Source of the DNA: Octopus sinensis
Lineage: Eukaryota
Direction of reading: 5' to 3'
DNA length: 63,625 nt
Assembly: GCF_006345805.1 (NCBI RefSeq)
Contig: NW_021832129.1
Location: 1 to 63,625, forward strand
Part shown: one piece after another, positions 7,630 to 32,971 of the stretch
How the letters are laid out: each line of letters opens with the position of its first letter
Numbering within the stretch: position 1 is the stretch's first letter
The notes under the pieces: generated by a model
Seen by the model: the letters and a program-made list of their open reading frames with translations, nothing else
Databases searched by the model: none
Told to the model about the DNA's origin: nothing
Position numbers and translations under genes: made by a program

Positions 7630-7818
7630 CTCTCTTTCTCTCTCTCTCTCGTCACTATTTCATGCAAAATGCGTTACATCAGCCGGATCGATATTTTCCT
7701 GAGATGATAAATATTTGTATGAGAATAAAGTGCGCGTATTGTTCCTTATGAATTCGCGCATGTGTGTGTGTGTTTGTGTGTTTGTGTGCACGCGCTCTCG
7801 CATATTTGTGAAAAAGTA

Positions 7819-7840
7819 AGGCGGCGAGCTGGCAGAAACG
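7819..7840 (+). mobile_element. 5' fragment of host tRNA-derived SINE (family 1)
   Basis: aggcggcgagctggcagaaacg matches the uninterrupted SINE head at ~57002. It is preceded by the TSD (a)tatttgtgaaaaagta at 7802/7803-7818. Confidence 0.85.
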
Positions 7841-8027
7841 TCACCACTTCGTTTGACGTCGGTTGTGTTTTTTTCGGCTCCTGAAAATTCGGTAAAAAAG
7901 AACAAAAAGCGTTGTTGTTGTTGTGGAAATTCTGAACGGCGTTGACGCGGTTTCGCGTTTCGCTCGTTCAGCGCGTTAAACTTTTTTCTGTTTTGGCGGC
8001 CGTTTTCGGTCTGTCAGACAGAAGGAA

Positions 8028-9433
8028 ATGGACTATGAGTCCCTCTAACAGACTTGTCCACGACAGATGAGGAACTGGAACAGGCAATTGCAGTGAAGCT
8101 GATGGAGGAAAAGGCTGGAGTTTTCGAGTCTTTATCAGACTTGTCTGAGAAGGAGCTAGAAAGGCAGCAGGAAATTGGAAAAGAAGCTGAGTTATACTTA
8201 TGCCGGTGTAACCAAGAAGGCGGAAGAGAAAGGGGTCGACTTGGCCAAGCTACCAAGTTAACCAGAAACACATGAAAAAGGAAAGCGGTGAGGTGGAACT
8301 ATCACCGACACCCAGGAGAAAAATGGTATGATAAGAGGACCATTGTTTACAGGGTGTTGCAAAACGAAGGAAGAGGGTAGAAGTTGTCCATGGAATGGAT
8401 AGAGGAAGCCCTGCGAAAACTGAGGAGGAAATAAATTTTCTGACTCGAGGATCCAAGTATGGGACCGTAGTTGTGCAGTTTTTAAAAAGTGAATCTGCAG
8501 CGAGGAAGATGGCGGCGAAGGCGGTGAAGTCGGAAAAGGTAACACTGTTACCTACGTATTTAAACAGGAGGATTACACGAATAAGGGTGGAGGGAGTGCC
8601 ACCAAACGTGGAGGCAGAATGGATTGTGGGGGCGCTGTGATCAGCGGCCACGAGGACGAAGTAGATATTCTCCATGCCTCGGTAAGTCCGAGGGCTGGAG
8701 AGGCGTAACAGTGGAGCTGAACGTACAGGCAGAGACCGAGGTACTGGTGGACCTGACGGAAAGCATCAGACTGGGAGAAGTGATCAGAGAGTGTGTGGTT
8801 GAGGGCAGGGCTCCACGTTGTGTACAAGTGTGGCCTTAGGGGTCACATAAGAGCCTTCTGCCCTCCCCCAGGGAAAGAAATGGATCCCGAACCAGAGAGA
8901 GAGAAGCAGAAACCAGAGGAGAAGGAAACAGAGGAAGAGAATACACAGAAATGGAAGGAAGCTGGAAGTAAGAGGAAGAGAAGAATACGTGGAAAATAAA
9001 ATAATATGGAACTACAATCCACCCCAAAACCACCCACGCCCTCTGAGTCCCACCCTATCCATGCAGACATTGAACCCACCCGCTCCCCCCCAACAAGAAA
9101 CACAAAGAAAAAAAGAATACACACACACAAGAGATTGAAATCGATATCAGGCCGTACATTTGTACTATGACTGAACAGAAAGAAGTAAAGTCTAATGGAA
9201 GAGTATAAATGGTATGATGTTGTGAGACTAGGTATGCTGTGATTGAAAAGAAGAACATAGGTGACTTTATGGTGATGTGTGAATGCGAGAATTGGGAGGT
9301 GAAAGATATAAGAATGAGCGATGAATTCGTGGAAAATATGGATGAGTATTTCGGAGTAAGAATGGATATGGAATTTGTTCGTATTGGCAAGGAACATTCA
9401 AGTGACTATGAAAAACAAAGGACAGGTAAGTGA
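8028..9433 (+). CDS. Element A unit 1 ORF1 (frameshifted as assembled)
   Basis: ATG 8028 (MDYES...) to ...RTGK-TGA 9433. Fragments match the consensus MDYESLTDLS...KRTIVYRV...TLLPTYLNRRITRIRVEGVPP...RAPRCYKCGLRGHIRAFC...MTEQKEV...RTGK. Confidence 0.75.
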
Positions 9434-9769
9434 TGCTGACGGACTGGGCCGTTGGTATCGCTTTCATTTAATCATTTTTTCGTTTAACAATTCATGTTCA
9501 TAAAGTTTAATTATAATGTTCTATGTCCCCATGTCTTTGGTGTCCCCTTCTGTGTCGCCCCTAGTGGGTAATAAGAAATCACCACTTCTTTTTTGACGTC
9601 GGTTGTGTTTTTTTTCGGCTCCTGAAAATTCGGTAAAAAAACAAAAAGCGTTGTTGTTGTTGTGGAAATTCTGAACGGCGTTTGACGCGCGGTTTCGCGT
9701 TTCGCTCGTTCAGCGCGTTAAACTTTTTTCTGTTTTGGCGGCCGTTTTCGGTCTGTCAGACAGAAGGAA

Positions 9770-11168
9770 ATGGACTATGAGTCTCTAACAGACTTGCCAC
9801 GACAGATGAGGAACTGGAACAGGCAATTGCAGTGAAGCTGATGGAGGAAAAGGCTGGAGTTTTCGAGTCTTTATCAGACTCGTCTGAGAAGGAGCTAGAA
9901 ATGGCAGCAAGGAATTTGGAAAAGAAGCTGAGTTATACTTATGGCCGGTGTAACAAGAAGGCGGAAGAGAAAGGGGTCGACTTGGCCAAGCTACCAAGTT
10001 ACCAGAAACACATGAAAAAGGAAAGCGGTGAGGTGGAACTATCACCGACACCCAGGAGAAAAGAATGGTATGATAAGAGGACCATTGTTTACAGGGTGTT
10101 CGCAAACGAAAGGAAGAGGGTAGAAGTTGTAACCATGGATGGATAGAGGAAGCCCTGCGAAGAACTGAGGAGGAAATAAATTTTCTGACTCGAGGATCCA
10201 AGTATGGGACCGTAGTTGTGCATTTTAAAAGTGAATCTGCAGCGAGGAAGATGGCGGCGAAGGCGGTGAAGTCGGAAAAGGTAACACTGTTACCTACGTA
10301 TTTAAACAGGAGGATTACACGAATAGGTGGAGGGAGTGCACCCAAACGTGAGGCAAATGGATGTGGGCGGCTGTGATCAGCGGCCACGAGGACGAAGTAG
10401 ATATTCTCCATGCCTCGGTTAAGTCCGAGGGCTGGAGAGGCGTAACAGTGGAGCTGAACGTACAGGCAGAGACCGAGGTACTGGTGGACCTGACGGAAAG
10501 CATCAGACTGGGAGAAGTGATCATGAGAGTGTGGGTGGAGGGCAGGGCTCCACGTTGTTACAAGTGTGGCCTGAGGGGTCACATAAGAGCCTTCTGCCCT
10601 CCCCCAGGGAAAGAAATGGATCCCGAACCAGAGAGAGAGAAGCAGAAACCAGAGGAGAAGGAAACAGAGGAAGAGAATACACAAAATGGAAGGAAGCTGG
10701 AAGTAAGAGGAAGAGAAGAATACGCGGAAAAGAAAATAATATGGAACTCCAATCCACCCCAAAACCACCCACCACCGCCCTCTGAGTCCCACCCTATCCA
10801 TGCAGACATTGAACCCACCCGCTCCCCCCCACAAGAAAACAAAGAAAAAAAAGAATACACACACACAGAGATTGAAATCGATATCAGGCCGTACTTTGTA
10901 CTATGACTGAACAGAAAGAAGTTAAAAGTCTAATGGAAGAGTATAAATGGTATGATGTTGGTGAGACTAGTATGCTGTGATTGAAAAGAAGAACATAGGT
11001 GACTTTATGGTGATGTGTGAATGCGAGAATTGGGAGGTGAAAGATATAAGAATGAGCGATGAATTCGTGGAAAATATGGATGAGTATTTCGGAGTAAGAA
11101 TGGATATGGAATTTGTTCGTATTGGCAAGGACTTCAAGTGACTATGAAAAACAAAGGACAGTAAGTGA
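9770..11168 (+). CDS. Element A unit 2 ORF1 (frameshifted as assembled)
   Basis: ORF-track fragments 9832-10146 and 10361-10906 carry the N-terminal part and the CX2CX4HX4C knuckle. Confidence 0.75.
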
Positions 11169-11501
11169 TTGCTGACGGACGGGCCGTTGGTATCGCTTTC
11201 ATTTAATCATTTTTTCGTTTAACAATTCATTTTCATAAAGTTTAATTATAATGTTCTATGTCCCCATGTTTTTTAGGTGTCCCCTTCTGTGTCCCCCTAT
11301 TGGGTAAGAAAGAAATCACCACTTCGTTTGACGTCGGTGTGTTTTTTTTCGGCTCCTGAAAATTCGGTAAAAAAGAACAAAAAGCGTTGTGTTGTTTGTG
11401 GAAATTCTGAACGGCGTTGACGCGGTTTCGCGTTTCGCTCGTTCAGCGCGTTAACTTTTTTCTGTTTTGGCGGCCGTTTTCGGTCTGTCAGACAGAAGGA
11501 A

Positions 11502-12909
11502 ATGGACTATGAGTCTCTAACAGACTTGTCCACGACAGATGAGGAACTGGAACAGGCAATTGCAGTGAAGCTGGATGGGAAAAGGCTGGAGATTTCGAGT
11601 CTTTATCAGACGTCTGCGTCTGAGAAGGAGCTAGAAATGGCAGCAAGGAAATTGGAAAAGAAGCTGAGTTATACTTATGCCGGTGTAACCAAGAAGCGGA
11701 AGAGAAAGGGGTCGACTTGGCCAAGCTACCAAGTTACCAGAAACACATGAAAAAGGAAGCGGTGAGGTGGAACTATCACCGACACCCAGGAGAAAAGAAT
11801 GGTATGATAAGAGGACCATTGTTTACAGGGTGTTTGCAAACGAAAGGAAGAGGGTAGAAGTTGTATCCATGGAATGGATAGAGGAAGCCCTGCGAAGAAC
11901 TGAGGAGGAAATAAATTTTCTGACTCGAGGATCCAAGTATGGACCGTAGTTGTGCACTTTAAAATGAATCTGCAGCGAGGAAGATGGCAGCGAAGGCGGT
12001 GAAGTCGGAAAAGTAACACTGTTACCTACGTATTTAAACCAGGAGGATTACACGAATAAGGTGGAGGGAGTGCCACCAAACGTGGAGGCAGAATGGATTG
12101 TGCGGCTGTGATCAGCGGCCACGAGGACGAAGTGGATATTCTCCATGCCTCGGTTAAGTCCGAGGGCTGGAGAGGCGTAACAGTGGAGCTGAACGTACAG
12201 GCAGAGACCGAGGTACTGGTGGACCTGACGGAAAGCATCAGACTGGGAGAAGTGATCATGAGAGTGTGGGTGGAGGGCAGGGCTCCACGTTGTTACAAGT
12301 GTGGCCTGAGGGGTCACATAAGAGCCTTCTGCCCTCCCCCAGGGAAAGAAATGGATCCCGAACCAGAGAGAGAGAAGCAGAAACCAGAGGAGAAGAGAAA
12401 CAGAGGAGAGAATACACAGAAATGGAAGGAAGCTGGAAGTAAGAGGAAGAGAAGAATACGTGGAAAAGAAAATAATATGGAACTCTCCAATCCACCCCAA
12501 AACCACCCACGCCCTCTGATCCCACCCTACCATGCAGACATTGAACCCACCCGCCTCCCCCCCAACAAGAAAACACAAAGAAAAAAAAGAATACACACAC
12601 ACAAGAGATTGAAAACGATATCAGGATGTACATTTGTACTATGACTGAACAGAAAGAAGTTAAAAGTCTAATGGAAGAGTATAAATGGTATGATGTTGGT
12701 GAGACTAGGTATGCTGTGATTGAAAAGAAGAACATAGGTGAGTTTATGGGGATGTGTGAAAGGAAGAATTGGGAGGTGAAAGATATAAGAATGAGCGATG
12801 AATTCGTGGAAAACATGGATGAGTATTTCGGAGTAAGAATGGATATGGAATTTATTCGTATTGGCAAAGAACATTCAGTGACTATGAAAAACAAAGGACA
12901 GGTAAGTGA
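11502..12909 (+). CDS. Element A unit 3 ORF1 (frameshifted as assembled)
   Basis: Fragments 11502-11750, 12093-12644 and 12626-12988. Knuckle CYKCGLRGHIRAFC at 12291-12332. Confidence 0.75.
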
Positions 12910-13254
12910 TGCTGACGGACGGGGCCGTTGGTATCGCTTTCATTTAATTCATTTTTTTCGTTTAACAATTCATGTTCATAAAGTTTAATTATAAGGTTAT
13001 ATGTCCCCATGTTTCTTAGTGTCCCTTTCTGTGTCGCCCCTAGTGGGTAATAAAGAATAAGAAAAACGTCACCACTTCGTTTGACGTCGGTTCGTGTTTT
13101 TACGCTCTGTAAAATCGGTAAAAAGACAAAAGCGTGGTTGTTGTTGTGAAATTTCTGAACGGCGTTGACGCGGTTTCGCGTTTCGCTCGTTCATCAGCGC
13201 GTTAACTTTTTTCTTGTTTTTTGCGGCCGTTTTCGGTCTGTCAGACAGAAGGAA

Positions 13255-14656
13255 ATGGAGTATGAGTCTCTAACAGACTTGTCCACGACAGATGAGGAAC
13301 TGGAACAGGCAATTGCAGTGAAGCTGATGGAGGAAAAGGCTGGAGTTTTCGAGTCTTTATCAGACTTGTCCTGAGAAGGAGCTAGAAATGGCAGCAAGGA
13401 AATTGGAAAAGAAGCTGAGTTATACTTATGCCGGTGTAACCAAGAAGGCGGAAGAGAAAGGGGTCGACTTGGCCAAGCTACCAAGTTACCAGAAACACAT
13501 GAAAAAGGAAAGCGGTGAGGTGGAACTATCACCGACACCCAGGAGAAAAGAATGGTATGATAAGAGGACCATTGTTTACAGGGTGTGCGCAAACGAAAGG
13601 AAGAGGGTAGAAGTTGTATCCATGGAATGGATAGAGGAAGCCCTGCGAAGAACTGAGGAGGAAATAAATTTTCTGACTCGAGGATCCAGTACGGGACCGT
13701 AGTTTTGCACTTTAAAAGTGAATCTGCAGCGAGGAAGATGGCAGCGAAGGCGGTGAAGTCGGAAAAGGTAACACTGTTACCGACGTATTTAAACAGGAGG
13801 ATTACACGAATAAGGGTGGAGGGAGTGCCACCAAACGTGGAGGCAGAATGGATTGTGGCGGCTGTGATCAGCGCCACGAGGACGAAGTGGATATTCTCCA
13901 TGCCTCGGTTAAGTCCGAGGGCTGGAGAGGCGTAACAGTGGAGCTGAACGTACGGCAGAGACCGAGGTACTGGTGGACCTGACGGAAAGCATCAGACTGG
14001 GAGAAGTGATCATGAGAGTGTGGGTGGAGGGCAGGGCTCCACGTTGTTACAAGTGTGGCCTGAGGGGTCACATAAGAGCCTTCTGCCCTCCCCCAGGGAA
14101 AGAAATGGATCCCGAACCAGAGAGAGAGAAGCAGAAACCAGAGGAGAAGGAAACAGAGGAAGAGAATACACAGAAATGGAAGAAGCTGGAAGTAAGAGGA
14201 AAGAAGAATACGTGGAAAAGAAAATAATATGGAACTGCAAATCCACCCCAAAACCACCCACGCCCTCTGAGTCCCACCCTATCCATGCAGACATTGAACC
14301 CACCCGCTCCCCCCCAACAAGAAAACAAAAGAAAAAAAAAATACACACACACAAGAGATTGAAATCGATATCAGGCCGTACATTTGTACTATGACTGAAC
14401 AGAAAGAAGTTAAAAGTCTAATGGAAGAGTATAAATGGTATGATGTTGGTGAGACTAGGTATGCTGTGATTGAAAAGAAGAACATAGGTGACTTTATGGT
14501 GATGTGTGAATGCGAGAATTGGGAGGTGAAAGATATAAGAATGAGCGATGAATTCGTGGAAAATATGATATATTCGGAGTAAGAATGGATATGGAATTTG
14601 TTCGTATTGGCAAGGAACATTCAAGTGACTATGAAAAACAAAGGACAGGTAAGTGA
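13255..14656 (+). CDS. Element A unit 4 ORF1 (frameshifted as assembled)
   Basis: Fragments 13388-13702, 13705-13935, 13973-14227 and 14391-14582 tile the consensus protein. Confidence 0.75.
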
Positions 14657-14994
14657 TGCTGACGGACGGGGCCGTTGGTATCGCTTTCATTTAATCATTT
14701 TTTCGTTTAACAATTCATGTTCATAAAGTTTAATTATAATGTTCTATGTCCCCATGTCTCTTAGGTGTCCCCTTCTGTGTCGCCCCTAGTGGGTAATAAA
14801 GAAATCAACCACTTTCGTTTGACGTCGGTCGTGTTTTTTTTACGCTCTGTAAAATTCGGTAAAAAAGAACAAAAAGCGTGGTTGTTGTTGTGGAAATTCT
14901 GAACGGCGTTGACGCGGTTTCGCGTTTCGCTCGTTCAGCGCGTTAAACTTTTTTCTGTTTTGGCGGCCGTTTTCGGTCTGTCAGACAGAAGGAA

Positions 14995-16398
14995 ATGGAC
15001 TATGAGTCTCTAACAGACTTGTCCACGACAGATGAGGAACTGGAACAGGCAATTGCAGTGAAGCTGATGGAGGAAAAGGCTGGAGTTTTCGAGTCTTTAT
15101 CAGACTTGTCTGAGAAGGAGCTAGAAATGGCAGCAAGGAAATTGGAAAAGAAGCTGAGTTATACTTATGCCGGTGTAACCAAGAAGCGAAGAGAAAGGGG
15201 TCGACTTGGCCAAGCTACCAAGTTACCAGAAACACATGAAAAAGGAAAGCGGTGAGGTGGAACTATCACCGACACCCAGGAGAAAAGAATGTATGATAAG
15301 AGGACCATTGTTTACAGGGTGTTGCGCAAACGAAAGGAAGAGGTAGAAGTTGTATCCATGGAATGGATAGAGGAAGCCCTGCGAAGAACTGAGGAGGAAA
15401 TAAATTTTCTGACTCGAGGATCCAAGTACGGGACCGAGTTGTGCACTTTAAAAGTGAATCTGCAGCGAGGAAGATGGCAGCGAAGGCGGTGAAGTCGGAA
15501 AAGGTAACACTGTTACCCGACGTATTAAAACAGGAGAATTACACGAATAAGGGTGAGGGAGTGCCACCAAACGTGGAGGCAGAATGGATTGTGGCGGCTG
15601 TGATCAGCGGCCACGAGGACGAAGTGGATATTCTCCATGCCTCGGTTAAGTCCGAGGGCTGGAGAGGCGTAACAGTGGAGCTGAACGTACAGGCAGAGAC
15701 CGAGTACTGGTGGACCTGACGAAAGCATCAGACTGGGAGAAGTGACATGAGAGTGTGGGTGGAGGGCAGGGCTCCACGTTGTTACAAGTGTGGCCTGAGG
15801 GGTCACATAAGAGCCTTCTGCCCTCCCCCAGGGAAAGAAATGGATCCCGAACCAGAGAGAGAGAAGCAGAAACCCAGAGAAAGGAAACAGAGGAAGAGAA
15901 TACACAGAAATGGAAGGAAGCTGGAAGTAAGAGGAGAGAAGAATACGTGGAAAAGAAAATAATATGGAACTCCAATCCACCCCAAAACCACCCACGTCCC
16001 TCTGAGTCCCACCCTATCCATGCAGACATTGAACCCACCCGCCCCCTCCCCCCCAACAAGAAAACAAAAGAAAAAAAAGAATACACACCCACACACAGAT
16101 TGAATCGATATATCAGGCCGTACATTTGTACTATGACTGAACAGAAAGAAGTTAAAAGTCTAATGGAAGAGTATAAATGGTATGATGTTGGTGAGACTAG
16201 GTATGCTGTGATTGAAAGAAGAACATAGGTGACTTTATGGTGATGTTTGAATGCGAGAATTGGGAGGTGAAAGATATAAGAATGAGCGATGAATTCGTGG
16301 AAAATATGGATGAGTATTTCGGAGTAAGAATGGATATGGAATTTGTTCGTATTGGCAAGAACATTCAAGTGACTATGAAAAACAAAGGACAGAAGTGA
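14995..16398 (+). CDS. Element A unit 5 ORF1 (frameshifted as assembled)
   Basis: Fragments 14995-15255, 15441-15719 and 15747-15962 tile the consensus protein. Confidence 0.75.
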
Positions 16399-16744
16399 TG
16401 CTGACGGACGGGGCCGTTGGTATCGCTTTCATTTAATCATTTTTTCGTTTAAAACAATTCATGTTCATAAAGTTTAATTATAATGTTATATGTCCCCATG
16501 TTTCTTAGTGTCCCTTTCTGTGTCGCCCCTAGTGGGTAATAAAGAAATAAGAAACGTCACCACTTCGTTTGACGTCGGTTGTGTTTTTTTTCGGCTCCTG
16601 AAAATTCGGTAAAAAGAACAAAAAGCGTGTTTGTTGTTGTGGAAATTCTGAACGGCGTTGACGCGGTTTCGCGTTTCGCTCGTTCAGCGCGTTAAACTTT
16701 TTTTTGTTTTTGGCGGCCGTTTTCGGTCTGTCAGACAGAAGGAA

Positions 16745-23397: not shown

Positions 23398-23741
23398 TGC
23401 TGACGGACGGGGCCGTTGGTATCGCTTTCATTTAATCATTTTTTCGTTTAACAATTCATGTTCATAAAGTTTAATTATAATGTTATATGTCCCCATGTTT
23501 CTTAGTGTCCCTTTCTGTGTCGCCCCTAGTGGGTAATAAAGAAATAAGAAACGTCACCACTTCGTTTGACGTCGGTTGTGTTTTTTTCGGCTCCTGAAAA
23601 TTCGGTAAAAAAACAAAAAAAAGCGGTGTTGTTGTTGTGGAAATTCTGAACGGCGTTGACGCGGTTTCGCGTTTCGCTCGTTCAGCGCGTTAAACTTTTT
23701 TCTGTTTTGGCGGCCGTTTTCGGTCTGTCAGACGGAAGGAA

Positions 23742-25151
23742 ATGGACTATGAGTCTCTGACAGACTTGTCCACGACAGATGAGGAACTGGAACGGGCAAT
23801 TGCAGTGAAGCTGATGGAGGAAAAGGCTGGAGTTTTCGAGTCTTTATCAGACTCGCCTACGTCTGAGAAGGAGCTAGAAATGGCAGCGAGGAATTTGGAA
23901 AAGAAGCTGAGTTATACTTATGCCGGTGTAACCAAGAAGGCGGAAGAGAAAGGGGTCGACTTGGCCAAGCTACCAAGTTACCAGAAACACATGAAAAAGG
24001 AAAGCGGTGAGGTGGAACTATCACCGACACCCAGGAGAAAAGAATGGTATGATAAGAGGACCATTGTTTACAGGGTGTGCGCAAACGAAAGGAAGAGGGT
24101 AGAAGTTGTATCCATGGAATGGATAGAGGAAGCCCTGCGAAGAACTGAGGAGGAAATAAATTTTCTGACTCGAGGATCCAAGTACGGGACCGTAGTTGTG
24201 CATTTTAAAAGTGAATCTGCAGCGAGGAAGATGGCAGCGAAGGCGGTGAAGTCGGAAAAGGTAACACTGTTACCTACGTATTTAAACAGGAGGATTACAC
24301 GAATAAGGGTGGAGGGAGTGCCACCAAACGTGGAGGCAGAATGGATTGTGGCGGCTGTGATCAGCGGCCACGAGGACGAAGTGGATATTCTCCATGCCTC
24401 GGTTAAGTCCGAGGGCTGGAGAGGCGTAACAGTGGAGCTGAACGTACAGGCAGAGACCGAGGTACTGGTGGACCTGACGGAAGCATCAGACTGGAGAAGT
24501 GATCATGAGAGTGTGGGTGGAGGGCAGGGCTCCACGTTGTTACAAGTGTGGCCTGAGGGGTCACATAGAGCCTTCTGCCCTCCCCCAGGGAAAGAAATGG
24601 ATCCCGAACCAGAGAGAGAGAAGCAGAAACCAGAGGAGAAGGAACAGAGGAAGAGAATACACAGAAATGGAAGGAAGCTGGAAGTAAGAGAAGAGAAGAA
24701 TACGTGGAAAAGAAAATAATATGGAACTGCAATCCACCCCAAAACCACCACCACACGCCCTCTGAGTCCCACCCTATCCATGCAGACATTGAACCCACCC
24801 GCTCCCCCCCAACAAGAAAACAAAAGAAAAAAAAGAATACACACACACAAGAGATTGAATCGATATCAGGCCGTACATTTGTACTATGACTGAACAGAAG
24901 AAGTTAAAAGTCTAATGGAAGAGTATAAATGGTATGATGTTGGTGAGACTAGGTATGCTGTGATTGAAAAAAGAACATAGGTGACTTTATGGTGATGTGT
25001 GAATGCGAGAATTGGAGGTGAAAGATATAAGAATGAGCGATGAATTCGTGGAAAATATGGATGAGTATTTCGGAGTAAGAATGGATATGGAATTTGTTCG
25101 TATTGGCAAGGAACATTCAAGTGACTATGAAAAACAAAGGACAGTAAGTGA
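23742..25151 (+). CDS. Element A unit 10 ORF1 (longest open stretch, about 245 codons in the consensus frame from the ATG)
   Basis: ORF 23742-24719 follows the consensus from MDYESLTDLS to ...VLVDLTE before shifting frame. Confidence 0.8.
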
Positions 25152-25494
25152 TGCTGACGGACGGGGCCGTTGGTATCGCTTTCATTTAATCATTTTTTCG
25201 TTTAACAATTCATGTTCATAAAGTTTAATTATAATGTTATATGTCCCCATGTTTCTTAGTGTCCCTTTCTGTGTCGCCCCTAGTGGGTAATAAAGAAATA
25301 AGAAACGTCACCACTTCGTTTGACGTCGGTTGTGTTTTTTTCGGCTCCTGAAAATTCGGTAAAAAAGAAAACAAAAGCGTGGTTGTTGTTGTGGAAATTC
25401 TGAACGGCGTTGACGCGGTTTCGCGTTTCGCTCGTTCAGCGCGTTAACTTTTTTCTGTTTTGGCGGCCGTTTTCGGTCTGTCAGACAGAAGGAA

Positions 25495-26895
25495 ATGGAC
25501 TATGAGTCTCTAACAGACTTGTCCACGACAGATGAGGAACTGGAACAGGCAATTGCAGTGAAGCTGATGGAGGAAAAGGCTGGAGTTTTCGAGTCTTTAT
25601 CAGACTTGTCTGAGAAGAGCTAGAAATGGCAGCAAGGAAATTGGAAAAGAAGCTGAGTTATACTTATGCCGGTGTAACCAAGAAGGCGGAAGAGAAAGGG
25701 GTCGACTTGGCCAAGCTACCAAGTTACCAGAAACACATGAAAAAGGAAAGCGGTGAGGTGGAACTATCACCGACACCCAGGAGAAAAGAATGGTATGATA
25801 AGAGGACCATTGTTTACAGGGTGTTCGCAAACGAAAGGAAGAGGGTAGAAGTTGTAACCATGGAATGGATAGAGGAAGCCCTGCGAAGAACTGAGGAGGA
25901 AATAAATTTTCTGACTCGAGGATCCAAGTACGGGACCGTAGTTGTGCATTTTAAAAGTGAATCTGCAGCGAGGAAGATGGCGGCGAAGGCGGTGAAGTCG
26001 GAAAAGGTAACACTGTTACCTACGTATTTAAACAGGAGGATTACACGAATAAGGTGGAGGGAGTGCCACCAACGTGGAGGCAGAATGGATTGTGGCGGCT
26101 GTGATCAGCGGCCACGAGGACGAAGTAGATATTCTCCATGCCTCGTTAAGTCCGAGGCTGGAGAGGCGTAACAGTGGAGCTGAACGTACAGGCAGAGACC
26201 GAGGTACTGTGGACCTGACGGAAAGCATCAGACTGGAGAAGTGATCATGAGAGTGTGGGTGGAGGCAGGGCTCCACGTTGTTACAAGTGTGGCCTGAGGG
26301 GTCACATAAGAGCCTTCTGCCCTCCCCCAGGGAAAAATGGATCCCGAACCAGAGAGAGAGAAGCAGAAACCAGAGGAAGAAGAAACAGAGGAAGAGAATA
26401 CACAGAAATGGAAGGAAGCTGGAAGTAAGAGGAAGAGAAGAATACGTGGAAAAGAAAATAATATGGAACTCCAATCCACCCCAAAACCACCCACGCCCTC
26501 TGAGTCCCACCCTATCCATGCAGACATTGAACCCCCCCGCTCCCCCCCAACAAGAAAACAAAAGAAAAAAAGAATACACACACACAAGAGATTGAAATCG
26601 ATATCAGAGGCCGTACATTTGTACTATGACTGAACAGAAAGAAGTTAAAAGTCTAATGGAAGAGTATAAATGGTATGATGTTGGTGAGACTAGGTATGCT
26701 GTGATTGAAAAGAAGAACATAGGTGACTTTATGGTGATGTGTGAATGCGAGAATTGGGAGGTGAAAGATATAAGAATGAGCGATGAATTCGTGGAAAATA
26801 TGGATGAGTATTTCGGAGTAAGAATGGATATGGAATTTGTTCGTATTGGCAAGGAACATTCAAGTGACTATGAAAAACAAAGGACAGGTAAGTGA
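25495..26895 (+). CDS. Element A unit 11 ORF1 (frameshifted as assembled)
   Basis: Fragments 25626-26171, 26337-26633 and 26626-26895. Confidence 0.75.
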
Positions 26896-27237
26896 TGCTG
26901 ACGGACGGGGCCGTTGGTATCGCTTTCATTTAATCATTTTTTCGTTTAACAATTCATGTTCATAAAGTTTAATTATAATGTTATATGTCCCCATGTTTCT
27001 TAGTGTCCCTTTCTGTGTCGCCCCTAGTGGGTAATAAAGAAATAAGAAACGTCACCACTTCGTTTGACGTCGGTGTGTTTTTTTTCGGCTCCTGAAAATT
27101 CGGTAAAAAGAACAAAAAGCGTGGTTGTTGTTGTGGAAACTCTGAACGGCGTTGACGCGGTTTCGCGTTTCGCTCGTTCAGCGCGTTAAACTTTTTTCTG
27201 TTTTGGCGGCCGTTTTCGGTCTGTCAGACAGAAGGAA

Positions 27238-28639
27238 ATGGACTATGAGTCTCTAACAGACTTGTCCCACGCAGATGAGGAACTGGAACAGGCAATTGCA
27301 GTGAAGCTGATGGAGGAAAAGGCTGGAGTTTTCGAGTCTTTATCAGACTTGTCTGAGAAGGAGCTAGAAATGGCAGCAAGGAAATTGGAAAAGAAGCTGA
27401 GTTATACTTATGCCGGTGTAACCAAGAAGGCGGAAGAGAAGGGGTCGACTTGGCCAAGCTACCAAGTTACCAGAAACACATGAAAAAGGAAAGCGGTGAG
27501 GTGGAACTATCACCGACACCCAGGAGAAAAGAATGGTATGATAAGAGGCCATTGTTTACAGGGTGTTCGCAAACGAAAGGAAGAGGGTAGAAGTTTAACC
27601 ATGGAATGGATAGAGGAAGCCCTGCGAAGAACTGAGGAGGAAATAAATTTTCTGACTCGAGGATCCAAGTATGGGACCGTAGTTGCATTTTTTTAAAAGT
27701 GAATCTGCAGCGAGGAAGATGGCGGCGAAGGCGGTGAAGTCGGAAAAGGTAACACTGTTACCTACGTATTTAACAGGAGGATTACACGAATAAGGGTGGA
27801 GGGAGTGCCACCAAACGTGGAGGCAGAATGGATTGTGGCGGCTGTGATCAGCGGCCACGAGGACGAAGTAGATATTCTCCATGCCTCGGTTAAGTCCGAG
27901 GCTGGAGAGGCGTAACAGTGGAGCTGAACGTACAGGCAGAGACCGAGGTACTGGTGGACCTGACGGAAAGCATCAGACTGGGAGAAGTGATCATGAGAGT
28001 GTGGGTGGAGGCAGGGCTCCACGTTGTTACAAGTGTGGCCTGAGGGGTCACATAAGAGCCTTCTGCCCTCCCCCAGGGAAAGAAATGGATCCCGAACCAG
28101 AGAGAGAGAAGCAGAAACCAGAGGAGAAGGAAACAGAGGAAGAGAATACACAGAATGGAAGGAAGCTGGAAGTAAGAGGAAGAAGAATACGTGGAAAAGA
28201 AAATAATATGGAACTCCAATCCACCCCAAAACCACCCACGCCCTCTGAGTCCCACCCTATCCATGCAGACATTGAACCCCCCCTCTCCCCCCACAACAAG
28301 AAAACAAAAGAAAAAAAAGAATACACACACACAAGAGATTGAAATCGATATCAGGCCGTACATTTGTACTATGACTGAACAGAAAGAAGTTAAAAGTCTA
28401 ATGGAAGAGTATAAATGGTATGATGTTGGTGAGACTAGGTATGCTGTGATTGAAAAGAAGAACATAGGTGACTTTATGGTGATGTGTGAATGCGAGAATT
28501 GGGAGGTGAAAGATATAAGAATGAGCGATGAATTCGTGGAAAATATGGATGAGTATTTCGGAGTAAGAATGGATATGGAATTTGTTCGTATTGGCAAGGA
28601 ACATTCAAGTGACTATGAAAAACAAGGACAGGTAAGTGA
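27238..28639 (+). CDS. Element A unit 12 ORF1 (frameshifted as assembled)
   Basis: Fragments 27238-27483, 27881-28342 and 28191-28709. The last reads ...KKKKNTHTQEIEIDIRPYICTMTEQ in frame. Confidence 0.75.
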
Positions 28640-28984
28640 TGCTGACGGACGGGGCCGTTGGTATCGCTTTCATTTAATCATTTTTTCGTTTAACAATTCA
28701 TGTTCATAAAGTTTAATTATAATGTTATATGTCCCCATGTTTCTTAGTGTCCCTTTCTGTGTCGCCCCTAGTGGTAATAAAGAAATAAGAAACGTCACCA
28801 CTTCTTCGTTTGACGTCGTTGTGTTTTTTTTCGGCTCCTGAAAATTCGGTAAAAAAGAACAAAAAGCGTGGTTGTTGTTGTGGAAATTCTGAACGGCGTT
28901 GACGCGGTTTCGCGTTTCGCTCGTTCAGCGCGTTAAACTTTTTTCTGTTTTGGCGGCCGTTTTCGGTCTGTCAGACAGAAGGAA

Positions 28985-30387
28985 ATGGACTATGAGTCTC
29001 TAACAGACTTGTCCACGACAGATGAGGAACTGGAACAGGCAATTGCAGTGAAGCTGATGGAGGAAAAGGCTGGAGTTTTCGAGTCTTTATCAGACTTGTC
29101 TGAGAAGGAGCTAGAAATGGCAGCAAGGAAATTGGAAAAGAAGCTGAGTTATACTTATGCCGGTGTAACCAAGAAGGCGGAAGAGAAAGGGGTCGACTTG
29201 GCCAAGCTACCAAGTTACCAGAAACACATGAAAAAGGAAAGCGGTGAGGTGGAACTATCACCGACACCCAGGAGAAAAGAATGGTATGATAAGAGGACCA
29301 TTGTTTACAGGGTGTTCGCAAACGAAAGGAAGAGGGTAGAAGTTGTAACCATGGAATGGATAGAGGAAGCCCTGCGAAGAACTGAGGAGGAAATAAATTT
29401 TCTGACTCGAGGATCCAGTATGGGACCGTAGTTGTGCATTTTAAAAGTGAATCTGCAGCGAGGAAGATGGCGGCGAAGGCGGTGAAGTCGGAAAAGGTAC
29501 ACTGTTACCTACGTATTTAACAGGAGGATTACACGAATAAGGGTGGAGGGAGTGCCACCAAACGTGGAGGCAGAATGGATTGTGGCGGCTGTGATCAGCG
29601 GCCACGAGGACGAAGTAGATATTCTCCATGCCTCGGTTAAGTCCGAGGGCTGGAGAGGCGTAACAGTGGAGCTGAACGTACAGGCAGAGACCGAGGTACT
29701 GGTGGACCTGACGGAAAGCATCAGACTGGGAGAAGTGATCATGAGAGTGTGGGTGGAGGGCAGGGCTCCACGTTGTTACAAGTGTGGCCTGAGGGGTCAC
29801 ATAAGAGCCTTCTGCCCTCCCCCAGGGAAAGAATGGATCCCGAACCAGAGAGAGAGAAGCAGAAACAGAGGAGAAGGAAACAGAGGAAGAAATACACAGA
29901 AATGGAAGGAAGCTGGAAGTAAGGAAGAGAAGAATACGTGGAAAAGAAAATAATATGGAACTCCAATCCACCCCAAAACCACCCACGCCCTCTGAGTCCC
30001 ACCCTATCCATGCAGACATTGAACCCACCCCCCCGCTCCCCCCCAACAAAAACAAAAGAAAAAAAAGAATACACACACACAAGAGATTGAAATCGATATC
30101 AGGCCGTACATTTGTACTATGACTGAACAGAAAGAAGTTAAAAGTCTAATGGAAGAGTATAAATGGTATGATGTTGGTGAGACTAGGTATGCTGTGATTG
30201 AAAAGAAGAACATAGGTGACTTTATGGTGATGTGTGAATTCGAGAATTGGGGGTGAAAGATATAAGAATGAGCGATGAATTCGTGGAAAATATGGATGAG
30301 TATTTCGGAGTAAGAATGGATATGGAATTTGTTCGTATTGGCAAGGAACATTCAAGTGACTATGAAAAACAAAGGACAGGTAAGTGA
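28985..30387 (+). CDS. Element A unit 13 ORF1 (frameshifted as assembled)
   Basis: Fragments 28985-29431 and 29543-29953. Stop at 30385-30387. Confidence 0.75.
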
Positions 30388-30838
30388 TGCTGACGGACGG
30401 GGCCGTTGGTATCGCTTTCATTTAATCATTTTTTCGTTTAACAATTCATGTTCATAAAGTTTAATTATAATGTTATATGTCCCCATGTTTCTTAGTGTCC
30501 CTTTCTGTGTCGCCCCTAGTGGGTAATAAAGAAATAAGAAACGTTAGCACGCCGTCAGGGTCGGACGTTGTTTTTTGTTCGGAAGGATGGAAAAAAAAGT
30601 GAAAAATTGTAAAAAAGACGTAACGGGATCAAATCGCGCGAGGCGTGCCGTTGCTTTTATAGAATGAACGCTCGTCGTTTTTACTTTTATAGAAGTTGTC
30701 AATTGTATGGTCCTATGTTTATAACCGTATTTTATTACTAGCTGTTGTTTTTTGGAAAAAAAAAGTTATTTTGATTGTTATTCGAAGTATATTACTTGTT
30801 GTCATTTATTAAGTCGCTAATGAGGGGGTAGGCCAATA

Positions 30839-32164
30839 ATGGCCAGCCCGAAGGCGGACAGAACGAGGACCCGAACCCCAGTCCTAAGCAGAGTCCAGTT
30901 AGCAGATGTCCAGTCCAGAAAGAATGGGTATTACCCGGTTTTTTTCTCTGATACCGACGAAGAGGAAAAAGCGTAACCAATAAGAAAAATTGTCAGGTAC
31001 GCAGAATATAGACTGCCAAGCTTGGCAAAGAAGATGTTACCTTCGCCGAAGCGGCAGGTCCCAAAGAAAAAAAATAATTTATCAAACTGGAGGAAATGAG
31101 AAGACTATATCAAGAACGGTTATGAAATAAAAATACGGCAGTCACAGGAATCTCGTGAAGGGATAGAGAAAAGAACAATATTTTATAAAACGTATAGAAA
31201 TAAAGAGAAAAAGATAGACTTCTCATCTGAAAAGGAAGTGGAACTGTGCTTAAAACCCATCTGGGAAAAAATAAAATTTATCACCAGAGGAAAGTGGAGA
31301 CTAGATTTGAAACGGAAGAAGAAGCAAGAGAACAATCGATGATTCCATTGAGAACGGAGGCGATAACTCTTCTTCCCGTCTACAGAGGAAGACACGTTTC
31401 AAAAATCACGGTAATGAATATACCACCGGAGGTCGAACCTGAACAGATAGTGGCCGCAGTCGCCGCAGGACTGGAAGAGAAACTCGAAATCAGGGACGCT
31501 ACTGTTGAGGACGCCAAAAAGTGGCAAGGACAAAAGGTAAAGATCACGATACAGGTAGAGCCGGCCGTCCTAGAGGAGATGGGAGAGGTAATTCAAATAG
31601 GCGACTGCCGGATGGCTGTAATGGTTGAGGACCGGCAGCCCAGGTGTTTTAACTGCGGCAAAAAAAGGCCATATTAAGAAATATTGTAAACCGGAAGAAG
31701 GGAAGAAAAAGGAAGAGACCCTAAAACCAACTACACAGGTAACTGTAACAACGACAACACCCATACCAGAAGAAGGGAGGGGTGGTCGCAAACAGCTACA
31801 AAGCGAAAACATAAGAACCCCTCCCCGGAGAAAACCAAAAGTGGAGGAGAGAAAAGAGAGGTTAAACAAGCAAAAAAAACCTGAAAAAGAAAATAACGTT
31901 TACGCGGCAATAAACACATCGAATAGAGAAGTGATGCGAAGAGTGGAAACTCACCACATCGAAGAAGTGAAAACAGTGATGGGACAAAGAATGTTCAATC
32001 TACTTGCTAATGACTTTCGAAAGGATCTGTGCTCATCTATGATGAGTGAAGAAGACGCTAAAAAAGACGTCGAAAAGAAGAACACCTGCACGCCGATTCC
32101 ACGGGCCCAGGAAGAAGAAGAGACGGGTTCCCCCCCTTCCGCCGGACCCAGACGAACAAGGTAA
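30839..32164 (+). CDS. Element B ORF1 (RRM-like + CCHC; frameshifted as assembled)
   Basis: KRTIFYK...FITRG...TLLPVYRGRHVSKITVMNIPPEVEPEQIVAAV...RQPRCFNCGKKGHIKKYC. 18 of 32 residues are identical to element A in the TLLP...IVAAV block. Stop TAA at 32162-32164. Confidence 0.8.
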
Positions 32165-32170
32165 GCAGAC

Positions 32171-32456
32171 ATGGCTGTTCATGTTGGCTGTATAAATGTG
32201 CACGGCCTGACATCGACACTGAAACAGGGCGTTTTCCTAAATGATGTCAGGTCGCAGTGTATATGAAGACTAAAACGAAAGTTTGAAAGACAGGCACCAT
32301 GATCTCTGGCTTCCGTCTTGGTGAACTTTTTTAAGTTTCACCTAAAAAAGGTGGAGCTAGAGAAAGGTGTCTGGATACGTGAGTTTCGAAAAAAGATGGA
32401 AGCGTGTCGCACGATTGGTGCGAGTGAAGTGGCCACATGAGCACGCTATGAGTTAG
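32171..32456 (+). pseudogene. Element B ORF2 remnant: APE endonuclease N-terminus fused to ORF2 C-terminus, RT deleted
   Basis: ATG 6 nt after the ORF1 stop gives MAVHVGCINVHGLTSTLKQGVFLNDVRSQCI (hxxxNVxGL APE start motif). It is followed, with frameshifts, by LKTGTMISGFRLVNFFKFHLKKK...FEKRWKRVARLVRV, which resembles Tx1 ORF2 C-termini (recognised from memory, not searched). Confidence 0.7.
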
Positions 32457-32698
32457 CTGCCGAGTTTCAGTGGGAAAAGCAGGGCTCGTGGGGTCGGCAA
32501 TCCTGGTGTTCCATCTTCATATGTCATTTTATGTTGTGTTGTAAAATTATATATAATCCGATTTCTTCGATTTTGTTTTCCAATTTTGTGTAAATTTTTA
32601 AAGATCATTTTTATGTAATCTCCATTCGTTTCTCATGACCCCAAATCATGATGTATTGTCCCCCTCTATGTTGGCCCCTTGTGGGTAATAAAGAAATA

Positions 32699-32913
32699 AG
32701 AAACGTTAGCACGCCGGGCGAAATGCGTAGTCGTATTTCGTCTGCCGTTATGTTCTGAGTTCAAATTTCCGAGGTCGACTTTGCCTTTCATCCTTTCGGG
32801 GTCGATAAATTAAGTACCAGTTACGCACTGGGGTCGATGTAATCAACTTAATCCGTTTGTCTGTCCTTGTTTGTCCCCTCTGTGTTTAGCACCTTGTGGG
32901 TAGTAAAGAAATA
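32699..32913 (+). mobile_element. Remainder of host SINE (family 1, Tx1-type tail)
   Basis: agaaacgttagcacgccgggcgaaatgc...gagttcaaatt (B-box-like)...gaggtcgactttgcctttcatcctttcggggtcg...tagtaaagaaata, followed by the second TSD copy at 32913/32914-32929. Confidence 0.9.
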
Positions 32914-32971
32914 TATTTGTGAAAAAGTATAATTCTTTTCGCCAATAAAGATACCCGGGATTCCATTTTAA

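What the first reader, a model, noticed from the sequence alone, without database searches (positions are those of the whole stretch)
7802..32929. A 230 bp SINE inflated to 25 kb by retroelements that target its tRNA-like head
Seen: the TSD (a)tatttgtgaaaaagta at 7802-7818 recurs at 32913-32929. Between the two copies, removing elements A (x13) and B and their duplicated target bases rebuilds one intact SINE that matches uninterrupted copies at ~6722 and ~57002. All inserts are in the same orientation and at the same position in the A-box region, so the Pol III A and B boxes are separated by ~25 kb. Established: Tx1-group LINEs are often sequence-specific (Tx1L in the Tx1D transposon, Keno in U2 snRNA genes, Dewa at tRNA arrays). 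Inference: this is a Tx1 family specialised on a very-high-copy, dispensable SINE, using it as a safe harbour and disabling it. I am not aware of this system being described, but cannot search.
Basis: partly seen in the sequence, partly recalled or inferred. Interest (0 to 1): 0.93.

Follow-up and report, generated by a model that had tools for sequence, protein, structure and literature searches.

The report
Octopus SINE repeatedly hit by LINE derivatives
One copy of a common octopus SINE has been split 25 kb apart by about ten successive insertions of defective L1/Tx1-like retroelements at one position in its head; that position is a recurrent hot spot, not the elements' only target, and the behaviour is already known for Tx1-type LINEs.

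Summary
A 17-bp duplication (7802-7818 and 32913-32929) brackets one SINE. Its first 23 bases (7819-7841) are separated from its last 213 bases (32700-32912) by 13 tandem copies of a 1.75-kb element A and one 2.15-kb element B, all on the + strand.

A encodes only an ORF1-type protein. B is an internally deleted LINE. A fuller relative of B (L006) has APE, RT and zf-RVT domains closest to human L1. A, B and the SINE share their last 45-65 bases, so the SINE is hit by its own partner LINE group.

Nine A junctions carry duplicated SINE bases and four are direct tail-to-head joins. Unit-specific changes fall from the 5' to the 3' end. This fits stepwise insertion at the regenerated 3'-most site.

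An independent SINE copy in Octopus vulgaris (L005) holds other A and B subfamilies at the same bases, so the site is a real hot spot. However, about 12 of 14 independent 3' junctions of this tail family lie outside SINE heads, and similar arrays occur at non-SINE sites. "Specialised on the SINE" is therefore not supported.

This is a new member of a known kind: Tx1-type target preference with tandems that sandwich target duplications.

The parts
7802..7818 (.). Left copy of the SINE's 17-bp target-site duplication, atatttgtgaaaaagta
   Evidence: identical to 32913-32929 and directly next to the SINE's 5' end.
7819..7841 (+). SINE head, first 23 nt (aggcggcgagctggcagaaacgt). The reused target heptamer gaaacgt is 7835-7841, and the nick is inferred at ggca|gaaacgt, give or take 2 nt
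   Evidence: aligns with the heads of intact copies.
7841..9578 (+). A unit 1 (1738 bp). It has the 'atca-type' tail variant and joins unit 2 directly, with no duplicated target bases
9579..11315 (+). A unit 2 (1737 bp), atca-type tail, direct join to unit 3
11316..13068 (+). A unit 3 (1753 bp), ending in a degenerate copy of the target (aagaaaaacg)
13069..14805 (+). A unit 4 (1737 bp), atca-type tail, direct join to unit 5
14806..16556 (+). A unit 5 (1751 bp), followed by the duplicated target aagaaacg
16557..18300 (+). A unit 6 (1744 bp), followed by the duplicated target (aagaacg)
18301..20048 (+). A unit 7 (1748 bp), atca-type tail, direct join to unit 8
20049..30537 (+). A units 8-13 (starts 20049, 21803, 23554, 25308, 27052, 28795; 1743-1754 bp each). 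Each is followed by the duplicated target aagaaacg(t). These units carry the fewest unit-specific changes. The longest ORF1 remnant is 23742-24719, in unit 10
30538..30553 (+). Copy of SINE bases gaaacgttagcacgcc. This is the upstream copy of B's 16-bp target-site duplication, and its first 7 nt are also the target copy after A unit 13
   Evidence: identical to 32700-32715.
30554..32699 (+). Element B (2146 bp), an internally deleted LINE. It has a 5' UTR and a frameshifted ORF1 (about 30839-32164, CCHC knuckle at 31645). The first 28 or so codons of ORF2 (APE N-terminus MAVHVGCINVHGL, from 32171) follow. A deletion of about 3.0 kb lies at about 32256, and the element ends in the shared 3' tail
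   Evidence: matches the L006 element at positions 202-1704 and 1703-2145.
32700..32912 (+). Rest of the SINE (213 nt), from gaaacgttagcacgcc... to ...gtgggtagtaaagaaat
32913..32929 (.). Right copy of the SINE's 17-bp target-site duplication
57002..57232 (+). Uninterrupted reference copy of the same SINE (head reads ggcagaatcgg), followed by further 183-bp body units up to 57527

Best explanation
An ordinary copy of an abundant octopus SINE inserted first and made a 17-bp duplication. Its head was then used about ten times as an integration site by two non-autonomous derivatives of one L1/Tx1-like LINE group. A is a 1.75-kb element that keeps only ORF1. B is a 2.15-kb copy that has lost most of ORF2. 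The same LINE group supplied the SINE's own 3' tail.

Each event is target-primed reverse transcription from a nick at the same bond (ggca|gaaacgt, give or take 2 nt). The second-strand break lies 7-9 bp downstream for A and 16 bp downstream for B. Every insertion therefore leaves a fresh copy of the site on its 3' side, still followed by intact SINE sequence. The next element lands there, so the array grows from 5' to 3' and B arrives last.

The four direct tail-to-head joins are best read as dimers or trimers made in a single event. The RT would jump from the 5' end of one A RNA (UCACCAC...) to the 3' end of an RNA of the ...AAAUCA tail subfamily, using 3 nt of microhomology.

The site is a hot spot, not an exclusive target.

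Shown here: the anatomy, the junctions, the domain content, the recurrence at L005 and the non-SINE copies. Inferred: the order of events, the template jumps, and recognition of sequence downstream of the nick.
For: Anatomy and junctions.

Independent recurrence: L005 has a different TSD, a different SINE tail subfamily, an A copy 85-87% identical to the consensus, and a B-type element that shares only 142 bp at the 5' end and 41 bp at the 3' end. It has the same junctions and the same 7-bp and 16-bp duplications.

Polarity:
- Unit-specific substitutions per unit, 5' to 3', are 17, 28, 27, 20, 17, 8, 17, 8, 4, 0, 2, 9, 3. Spearman rho is -0.81 (permutation p = 0.0006).
- The trend survives when only isolated substitutions are counted (rho -0.61, p = 0.027) and for private indels (rho -0.67, p = 0.012).
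- The neighbour-joining tree of the units is ladder-like and largely follows array order.
- There is no higher-order periodicity in the distance matrix.

Tail type and junction type: the four units with direct joins (1, 2, 4, 7) are exactly the four with the tail variant (C at 1685 and 1712 in all four; C at 1699 in units 1, 4 and 7) that other loci also carry. Fisher p = 0.0014.

Repeated insertion at one site happens elsewhere in this family: L003 has three copies with different 5' truncations (1234, 1422, 11), each followed by agaaatctacccacgtg.

Partner relationship: the tails of A, B, the L006 LINE and the SINE align over 45-65 nt.

LINE identity.

Precedent: Tx1 families prefer particular transposons, and tandem copies 'sandwiching a TSD' arise by sequential insertion (PMC4494074). 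R1 tandems are separated by 33 nt of duplicated rDNA (PMC5932611).
Against: - The window units form one clade against all sampled external copies. That also fits local copying. It could equally be a species or subfamily effect, because all external copies come from one Octopus vulgaris assembly.
- Shared variants are mosaic and non-contiguous, so some gene conversion or unequal exchange inside the array is likely.
- Many unit-specific 'substitutions' cluster next to indels. Unit 10 has 0 private substitutions but 7 private indels, so part of the variation may be assembly error and the age gradient is softer than the raw numbers suggest.
- Only 11 external loci could be fetched. Of roughly 14 independent 3' junctions of this tail family, 2 are in the SINE head.
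- Read support for the array could not be checked.
Confidence: 0.6

Rival explanations
1. R1-array model. Only one or two real insertions occurred at the SINE head. The unit 'element plus duplicated target' was then amplified locally by unequal sister-chromatid exchange and homogenised by gene conversion.
For: - The window units are monophyletic against external copies.
- Shared variants are mosaic.
- Arrays at L001/L010 show higher-order repeats: junction types recur every 3 units, and the 5' flank is duplicated inside L010. Unequal exchange therefore does act on A arrays.
- The R1 array is a precedent (PMC5932611).
Against: - The fall in unit-specific changes runs in one direction only. An edge effect of unequal exchange should make both ends divergent.
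- The tree is ladder-like and follows array order.
- There is no block or periodic structure in the distances.
- Two tail subfamilies are interleaved, and each is tied to its own junction type.
- B uses the same nick with a different duplication length.
Confidence: 0.2
2. Homology-guided re-insertion instead of endonuclease specificity. The endonuclease is nearly non-specific. Transcripts of a resident copy read through the weak 3' end into the flank, and that flank sequence anneals to the nicked target. This directs the new copy to the same junction, either in cis at unique sites or in trans at any of the roughly 10^5 SINE heads when the source copy itself sits in a SINE head.
For: - Ordinary insertions of this tail family have unrelated targets with 11-18 bp TSDs (L006, L011, L009 and the SINEs themselves).
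- TSD-sandwiched tandems nevertheless form at unique non-SINE sites (L003, L009, L011). A non-specific nuclease acting alone could hardly do this.
- The window units and the L003 copies each share locus-specific tail variants.
- Co-transcribed target sequence is known to strengthen specific integration of R1 and R2 (cited in PMC4494074).
Against: - No read-through transcript was observed.
- The duplication lengths (7 bp for A, 16 bp for B) are reproduced at two independent loci. This looks like a fixed geometry of two cuts.
- The L005 and window elements are different subfamilies, so trans-homing would have had to arise more than once.
Confidence: 0.25
3. This is a Tx1 lineage whose endonuclease is specialised on this SINE. 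It uses the SINE as a dispensable safe harbour and thereby inactivates it.
For: The same bond is used in two independent SINE copies by A-type and B-type elements. A possible third use, by a SINE, is at L003(-)30028. Tx1 families with transposon targets are known (PMC4494074).
Against: - About 12 of 14 independent 3' junctions of the tail family are not in SINE heads, including the only near-full-length LINE found (L006).
- Of the 14 SINE-head 5' halves found in 398 kb, only the two already known are interrupted at this site.
- Most heads read gaatcgt, not gaaacgt.
- No benefit to the LINE or harm to the SINE family can follow from rare hits on dead copies.
Confidence: 0.12
4. Assembly artefact. 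The number of units, or the junctions, were created by mis-assembly of a repeat.
For: Indel density is high and all 13 ORFs are broken, including in units with no private substitutions.
Against: - Every unit has its own variants, and there are two junction types.
- Comparable arrays exist in an independent chromosome-level assembly (GCA_951406725.2: L001, L002, L008, L010, L011) and in O. sinensis (L007).
- L005 reproduces the SINE-A-B architecture.
Confidence: 0.05

Closest known systems
Tx1-Mar LINEs and SINEU in crocodilians, which insert preferentially into the Mariner-N4_AMi transposon (Kojima 2015, PMC4494074)
   Same: An APE-type L1-superfamily LINE group and its non-autonomous partners prefer one site in another abundant transposon. 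The preference is graded (13-90% of copies there). Tandem copies 'sandwiching a TSD' are explained by sequential insertion.
   Different: Here the target is a SINE head, not a DNA transposon. The target SINE carries the invading LINE's own tail. The array is much longer (13 + 1 elements). The preference is estimated from very few loci. Clade membership is untested.
Tx1L inserted in Tx1D in Xenopus laevis (Christensen et al. 2000, as cited in PMC4494074)
   Same: A LINE sits at a fixed site inside another mobile element, and the endonuclease is taken to determine the site.
   Different: Tx1L is close to exclusive for its site. Most A and B copies sampled here lie elsewhere.
R1 tandem array of Drosophila melanogaster (Roiha et al. 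1981; McGurk and Barbash 2018, PMC5932611)
   Same: Head-to-tail LINE copies are separated by identical duplicated target bases. The array starts with repeated insertion at one site.
   Different: R1 expansion is attributed to unequal exchange. Here a one-directional age gradient and interleaved subfamilies argue for many separate insertions. The target is rDNA there and a SINE here.
HAL1 'half-L1' elements of mammals (Bao and Jurka 2010; from my own knowledge, not checked here)
   Same: A is a LINE derivative that keeps an ORF1 intact in its consensus (469 aa) and has no ORF2, so it must borrow ORF2p in trans.
   Different: A belongs to a different lineage. It has a specific non-poly(A) tail, and no copy in the window has an intact ORF.
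Dewa (tRNA gene arrays) and Keno (U2 snRNA genes), both Tx1-clade elements (Kojima and Fujiwara 2004; Keno as cited in PMC4494074, Dewa from my own knowledge)
   Same: Tx1-type elements that target small-RNA-gene-like sequences present in many copies.
   Different: Those targets are functional RNA genes. Here the target is a retroposed SINE whose head is not recognised as a tRNA by ARAGORN or Rfam.

Membership tests
L1 superfamily / Tx1 clade of non-LTR retrotransposons | ORF2 with an N-terminal APE endonuclease, an RT and a C-terminal Cys/His zinc-binding domain | tested here: met
   Met in the fuller relative L006, not in the window copies. Exo_endo_phos E = 3.5e-12, RVT_1 E = 1.6e-28 and zf-RVT E = 8.9e-11. 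The best PDB matches are human L1 ORF2p (RT 3.4e-40, endonuclease about 1e-13). No R1 or TRAS endonuclease appears at E <= 1. B in the window keeps only about 28 codons of the APE domain.
L1 superfamily / Tx1 clade of non-LTR retrotransposons | RT phylogeny places the element inside the Tx1 clade | not tested
   No reference Tx1 sequences were available in the tools. 'L1-Tx1' families are annotated in O. vulgaris (13 recently active families, PMC13282606), but A and B were not matched to them.
L1 superfamily / Tx1 clade of non-LTR retrotransposons | ORF1 protein with RRM-type domain(s) followed by a CCHC knuckle | tested here: inconclusive
   zf-CCHC scores fall below the Pfam cut-off (13.6-19.5 bits against 20.8). 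The CX2CX4HX4C motif is visible. The AlphaFold model of P0008 is of low confidence (pLDDT 52.9; 70-83 in residues 100-250). Its best fold matches are tandem-RRM proteins at E of about 1e-4 with low TM-scores.
Sequence-specific (target-specific) LINE | The large majority of copies lie at one defined target sequence | tested here: not met
   2 of about 14 independent 3' junctions of the tail family are at the SINE-head site. The others have unrelated flanks with 11-18 bp TSDs. The sample is small and was gathered through annotated protein models.
Sequence-specific (target-specific) LINE | Independent insertions share the same 3' junction to the nucleotide | tested here: met
   The window and L005 have different TSDs, different SINE subfamilies and different element subfamilies. 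A random hit on this exact bond and strand has a probability of at most about 2e-4 per event, even if all SINEs (11.6% of 2.8 Gb, PMC13282606) had this head.
tRNA-derived SINE (SINE2) | A tRNA-related head with Pol III A and B boxes | tested here: inconclusive
   ARAGORN finds no tRNA in the window or loci. Rfam gives no tRNA match even at E <= 10. Only motif-level resemblance is seen (tggcagaaacg to the A box, gagttcaaattcc to the B box).
tRNA-derived SINE (SINE2) | Short, dispersed, flanked by TSDs, with a 3' tail shared with a partner LINE | tested here: met
   TSDs of 17, 15 and 11 bp at three copies. The tail aligns with the L006 and B tail over 45-65 nt. There are 14 head 5' halves in 398 kb.
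ORF1-only 'half-LINE' (HAL1-like) | The consensus carries an intact ORF1, has no ORF2, and has a LINE-type 3' end | tested here: met
   The A consensus is 1753 bp, with a single 469-aa ORF at positions 188-1597. That ORF is homologous to the ORF1 of B, L006 and P0008. No window copy is intact.

The most novel reading that the evidence does not exclude
The LINE group has evolved true recognition of at least 16 bp in the head of the very SINE that parasitises it, either through its endonuclease or through RNA-guided priming. On this reading, SINE heads across the genome act as renewable landing pads. Each hit separates the SINE's promoter halves and regenerates the site. LINE and SINE would then be in direct molecular conflict, or the LINE would be farming its parasite as a safe harbour.
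Probability: 0.15. Interest if true: 0.7.

Novelty: new member of a known kind. Interest (0 to 1): 0.4.

Why it matters
Target preference of Tx1-type LINEs for other transposons is established, and so are tandem copies separated by duplicated target bases. This locus adds three things:
- The target is a SINE head, a target type not found in the searchable literature.
- The SINE shares its tail with the invading LINE group.
- The array is unusually long and polar.

If the polarity holds, it works as a natural footprinting experiment. New copies always use the site that keeps SINE sequence downstream, never those that keep it upstream. Recognition must therefore lie 3' of the nick.

The family's general habit of building tandems in Octopus vulgaris and O. 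sinensis (A arrays, the 3.6-kb L007 array, multimeric SINE bodies) is also a plausible source of large satellite-like repeats in octopus genomes. In addition, it explains spurious 'hypothetical protein' gene models in the O. vulgaris annotation.

Tried and rejected
- **tRNA origin of the head.** ARAGORN on the window and all loci, Rfam at gathering threshold on the whole window, and Rfam at E <= 10 on an intact copy gave no tRNA hit.
- **More loci.** Two metagenome scans, one with the tail-SINE junction and one with the A 5' end, found nothing. The other collections hold no octopus DNA.
- **Naming the SINE and the LINE family.** Literature searches did not give sequences to compare. The supplement of PMC13282606 is only a short document.
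- **Structure of ORF1p.** The accepted model is of low confidence.
- **Composite model, rejected.** SINE head + A + B + SINE body might have been retrotransposed as one unit to give both the window and L005. However, the two SINEs have different tail subfamilies, the A copies differ by about 14%, and the B-type elements share only their ends.
- **Template-switch chimera model, rejected.** One reverse transcription hopping between SINE, B and A RNAs would need more than 14 precise returns to copy 7-nt SINE pieces.
- **Microhomology priming, rejected as the explanation of the site.** The idea was pairing between the tail's AGAAA and the target's AGAAAC. The junction keeps both copies, and AGAAA is too common to define a hot spot.

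Full report
**1. The observation**

The 17-mer atatttgtgaaaaagta lies at 7802-7818 and again at 32913-32929. Immediately inside the left copy are 23 nt of a SINE head, aggcggcgagctggcagaaacgt (7819-7841). Immediately inside the right copy is the SINE's 3' end...gtgggtagtaaagaaat (to 32912).

Between them lie 13 head-to-tail units of 1737-1754 bp, called A. Their starts are 7841, 9579, 11316, 13069, 14806, 16557, 18301, 20049, 21803, 23554, 25308, 27052 and 28795. One 2146-bp element, B, follows at 30554-32699. All are on the + strand.

Joining 7819-7841 to 32707-32912 gives a 230-nt SINE that aligns end to end with intact copies. These are at window 57002, L003(-)28430, L005 20593 and L002(-)22803.

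Nine of the 13 A junctions carry a copy of the SINE bases (t)aagaaacg. The junctions after units 1, 2, 4 and 7 are direct joins...aaagaaa|tcaccac.... B has the same 3' junction as A (...aaagaaataa|gaaacgttagc). Its 5' junction is 9 bp further on, which gives a 16-bp duplication, gaaacgttagcacgcc (30538-30553 and 32700-32715).

**2. What the inserts are**

The majority consensus of the 13 A units is 1753 bp and has one intact 469-aa ORF at positions 188-1597. It has a CX2CX4HX4C knuckle and no ORF2. No window copy is intact.

B carries a homologous, frameshifted ORF1. It then has a stop, an ATG and about 28 codons of an endonuclease N-terminus (MAVHVGCINVHGL...). A deletion follows, then the 3' end.

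Protein searches hit only Octopus vulgaris and O. sinensis models, so the window comes from one of these species or a close relative.

One hit led to L006, a 5.2-kb element that contains the 3.0 kb missing from B. L006 has:
- a 394-aa ORF1;
- an ORF2 with Exo_endo_phos (E = 3.5e-12), RVT_1 (1.6e-28) and zf-RVT (8.9e-11). This ORF2 is frameshifted.

In the PDB its RT and endonuclease are closest to human L1 ORF2p (3.4e-40 and about 1e-13). R2 is far behind, and no R1 or TRAS endonuclease appears.

A low-confidence model of the intact ORF1 protein P0008 matches tandem-RRM proteins weakly.

The elements are therefore non-autonomous derivatives of an L1-superfamily LINE group. 'Tx1' is plausible, since L1-Tx1 families are annotated as recently active in O. 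vulgaris (PMC13282606). It was not tested by phylogeny.

A and B share only their last 45 or so bases with each other. The same tail is found on the SINE, and the B/L006 tail aligns with the SINE tail over about 65 nt. The SINE is thus a partner of this LINE group.

The 'tRNA-like head' and 'A box' rest on motif resemblance only.

**3. Other genomic copies**

Eleven loci totalling 335 kb were fetched through annotated proteins.

- **L005** is the key one. A SINE of a different tail subfamily, with its own TSD (atatttaacct), has its head interrupted after ...gcagaaacgt by an A copy 85-87% identical to the consensus. Next come gaaacgtcagcacgcc and a B-type element that shares only B's first 142 bp and last 41 bp. 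The SINE then resumes at gaaacgttagcacgcc. The bond, the order, and the 7-bp and 16-bp duplications are the same, yet the events are independent.
- **L006** (the fuller LINE) has an 18-bp TSD, gtgtgtttcttaaatggc, in unique sequence.
- **L004** is a single 5'-truncated copy in unique sequence.
- **L011** has two A copies inside the TSD gccttactgctttctgct.
- **L009** has two copies separated by 13 duplicated bases.
- **L003** has three A copies with different 5' ends (1234, 1422, 11), each followed by agaaatctacccacgtg.
- **L001, L002, L008 and L010** carry the same macro-structure on four chromosomes: an A array with direct joins, a divergent A', and a 5'-truncated related element. L001 and L010 also share a 5' flank, and higher-order repeats are present. 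These four loci are therefore not independent, and unequal exchange or segmental duplication acts on them.
- **L007** (O. sinensis) is a 3573-bp tandem array of a related ORF1 element at 99% identity.

A scan for the tail motif across all 398 kb gave roughly 14 independent 3' junctions. Two of them are at the SINE-head site. One further case is possible: at L003(-)30028 a SINE tail is followed directly by gaatcgtttgcacgtcggg..., an older SINE that begins at exactly that nucleotide.

Of the 14 SINE-head 5' halves found in those 398 kb, only the two known ones are interrupted at this site. Most heads read gaatcgt, whereas both interrupted ones read gaaacgt.

**4. Is the site preference real?**

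Yes, as a hot spot. SINEs make up 11.6% of the 2.8-Gb genome (PMC13282606). Even if every SINE carried this head, a random insertion would hit this bond and strand with a probability of at most about 2e-4. L005 was found without reference to SINEs, among about 8 independent loci.

It is not specialisation.

**5. How the array was built**

*Age gradient.* Unit-specific substitutions in gap-free columns run 17, 28, 27, 20, 17, 8, 17, 8, 4, 0, 2, 9, 3 from 5' to 3' (rho -0.81, permutation p = 0.0006). The tree of units is ladder-like and largely follows array order. There is no periodic structure in the distances.

*Caveat.* Many of these substitutions cluster next to indels. Private indels are numerous (5-19 per unit) and mostly not in homopolymers. 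Unit 10 has 0 private substitutions but 7 private indels. Part of the variation may therefore be assembly error. The trend survives in isolated substitutions (rho -0.61, p = 0.027) and in indels (rho -0.67, p = 0.012).

*Polarity.* A gradient in one direction, with the youngest units next to the intact 3' part of the SINE, fits addition at the 3'-most copy of the site. It argues against a pure unequal-exchange history, in which both array edges should be divergent. It also implies that what is recognised lies downstream of the nick. Only the 3'-most gaaacgt is followed by tagcacgcc..., while its upstream neighbour is an element tail, not SINE sequence.

*Direct joins.* The four units with direct joins (1, 2, 4, 7) are exactly the four that carry the tail alleles seen at other loci (C1685 and C1712 in all four, C1699 in units 1, 4 and 7...aaatca end). 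The nine units followed by duplicated target bases carry a derived tail (...aaataa). Fisher p = 0.0014. In the other arrays every direct join also follows ...atca.

My inference is that each block (1-2-3, 4-5, 7-8) is a single event. The cDNA would end in ...TGA after copying the 5' UCACCAC of the first RNA, then pair with the terminal UCA of a second RNA and continue. This gives about ten events in total: nine for A blocks and one for B. Read-through dimer transcripts, or deletion by microhomology, would give the same junction.

*Rate-based age.* Using the rate implied in PMC13282606 (JC 0.065 for about 18 My), the oldest units would be a few million years old and the youngest under one million. 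This is very rough.

**6. Rival explanations**

- *Unequal exchange after one or two insertions.* It is supported by the monophyly of window units, the mosaic variants and the higher-order repeats elsewhere. The polarity and the interleaved subfamilies argue against it.
- *RNA-homology-guided re-insertion.* Here read-through into the flank directs the new copy. This would explain why a family with otherwise unrelated targets builds TSD-sandwiched tandems at unique sites (L003, L009, L011). A source copy sitting in a SINE head could then home to other heads. The reproducible 7-bp and 16-bp duplications argue for a fixed cutting geometry instead. This rival concerns how the site is chosen. It is compatible with stepwise insertion.
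- *Specialised safe-harbour Tx1 lineage.* This does not fit the non-SINE majority.
- *Assembly artefact.* This is unlikely, given unit-specific variants and comparable arrays in two other assemblies.

**7. Comparison with what is known**

Tx1-clade elements often prefer a site in another repeat. Tx1L inserts in Tx1D. Tx1-Mar and its SINEU partners insert in Mariner-N4_AMi, with 13-90% of copies at the site and tandem copies sandwiching a TSD that are attributed to sequential insertion (PMC4494074). R1 tandems separated by 33 nt of duplicated rDNA are the classic LINE array (PMC5932611). ORF1-only LINE derivatives are known as HAL1 (my own knowledge).

Searches of the paper library found no LINE reported to prefer a SINE head, and the recent O. 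vulgaris repeat annotation does not mention it.

I therefore file this as a new member of a known kind. It has two points of added interest. The target SINE shares the invader's tail. The array's polarity points to recognition downstream of the nick.

**8. Verdict**

- Observation: confirmed.
- Interpretation: partly supported. The hot spot is real. Specialisation and a selected 'disabling' role are not supported.
- Interest: 0.4.

Noticed in passing
window 6753-7123 and 57051-57527; L003(-) 30446-30028: The SINE itself occurs as a head plus 2.0-2.6 tandem body units of 183-184 bp. The junction is always aaagaaatag|gtatttcgtctgcc. This is either a multimeric SINE family or the same tail-to-head tandem habit seen in the LINE derivatives.
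   Followed up: partly
L003 minus strand, about 30028: The tail of a dimeric SINE (...gtgggcaataaagaaataa) is followed directly by gaatcgtttgcacgtcggg.... This is an older SINE that begins at exactly the nucleotide where A and B sit in the window. No TSD is visible. It may be a third use of the same nick site, this time by a SINE.
   Followed up: partly
L001 5242-22510, L002 1-15650, L008 7075-13825, L010 1969-12100: The same macro-structure lies on four O. vulgaris chromosomes: an A array with direct joins, a copy 75% identical (A'), then a 5'-truncated ORF1-type element starting catggaggaaagc. L001 and L010 share a 5' flank, and higher-order repeats are present. It looks like a large duplicated or mobile composite.
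   Followed up: partly
L007 7845-21353 (O. sinensis CM016867.1): A tandem array of a related ORF1-encoding element, with a period of 3573 bp, at least 4 copies and about 99% identity. All copies have the identical junction ...aataataaaacagatta|tttgatgaag.
   Followed up: no
window 6722 and L010 93503: Two SINE copies start at gca(g)aaacgt, 3 nt upstream of the insertion site, and lack the first 13 or so nt of the head.
   Followed up: no
window 7819-30537 (all A units): Private indels are frequent (5-19 per 1.75-kb unit), and only 20 of 196 indel columns are in homopolymers. Unit 10 has no private substitution but 7 private indels. This suggests residual assembly error, so 'no intact ORF1 in the window' may not reflect biology.
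   Followed up: partly
O. vulgaris annotation (P0001-P0021; loci L001-L011): Fragments of the A ORF1 are built into 'hypothetical protein' models and even into a model named as a KEOPS subunit TP53RK isoform and a HAUS1-domain model. These look like annotation artefacts caused by the arrays.
   Followed up: no
window 58060-58075: Another member of the tail family (...gtggctaataaagaaa|cgcctgtttc) lies just downstream of the SINE cluster at 57-57.7 kb. The element it belongs to was not identified.
   Followed up: no
window 35669-36037: A 15-bp tandem repeat (CCGCCGTCATCACCA, 24 copies). It is unrelated to the finding.
   Followed up: no
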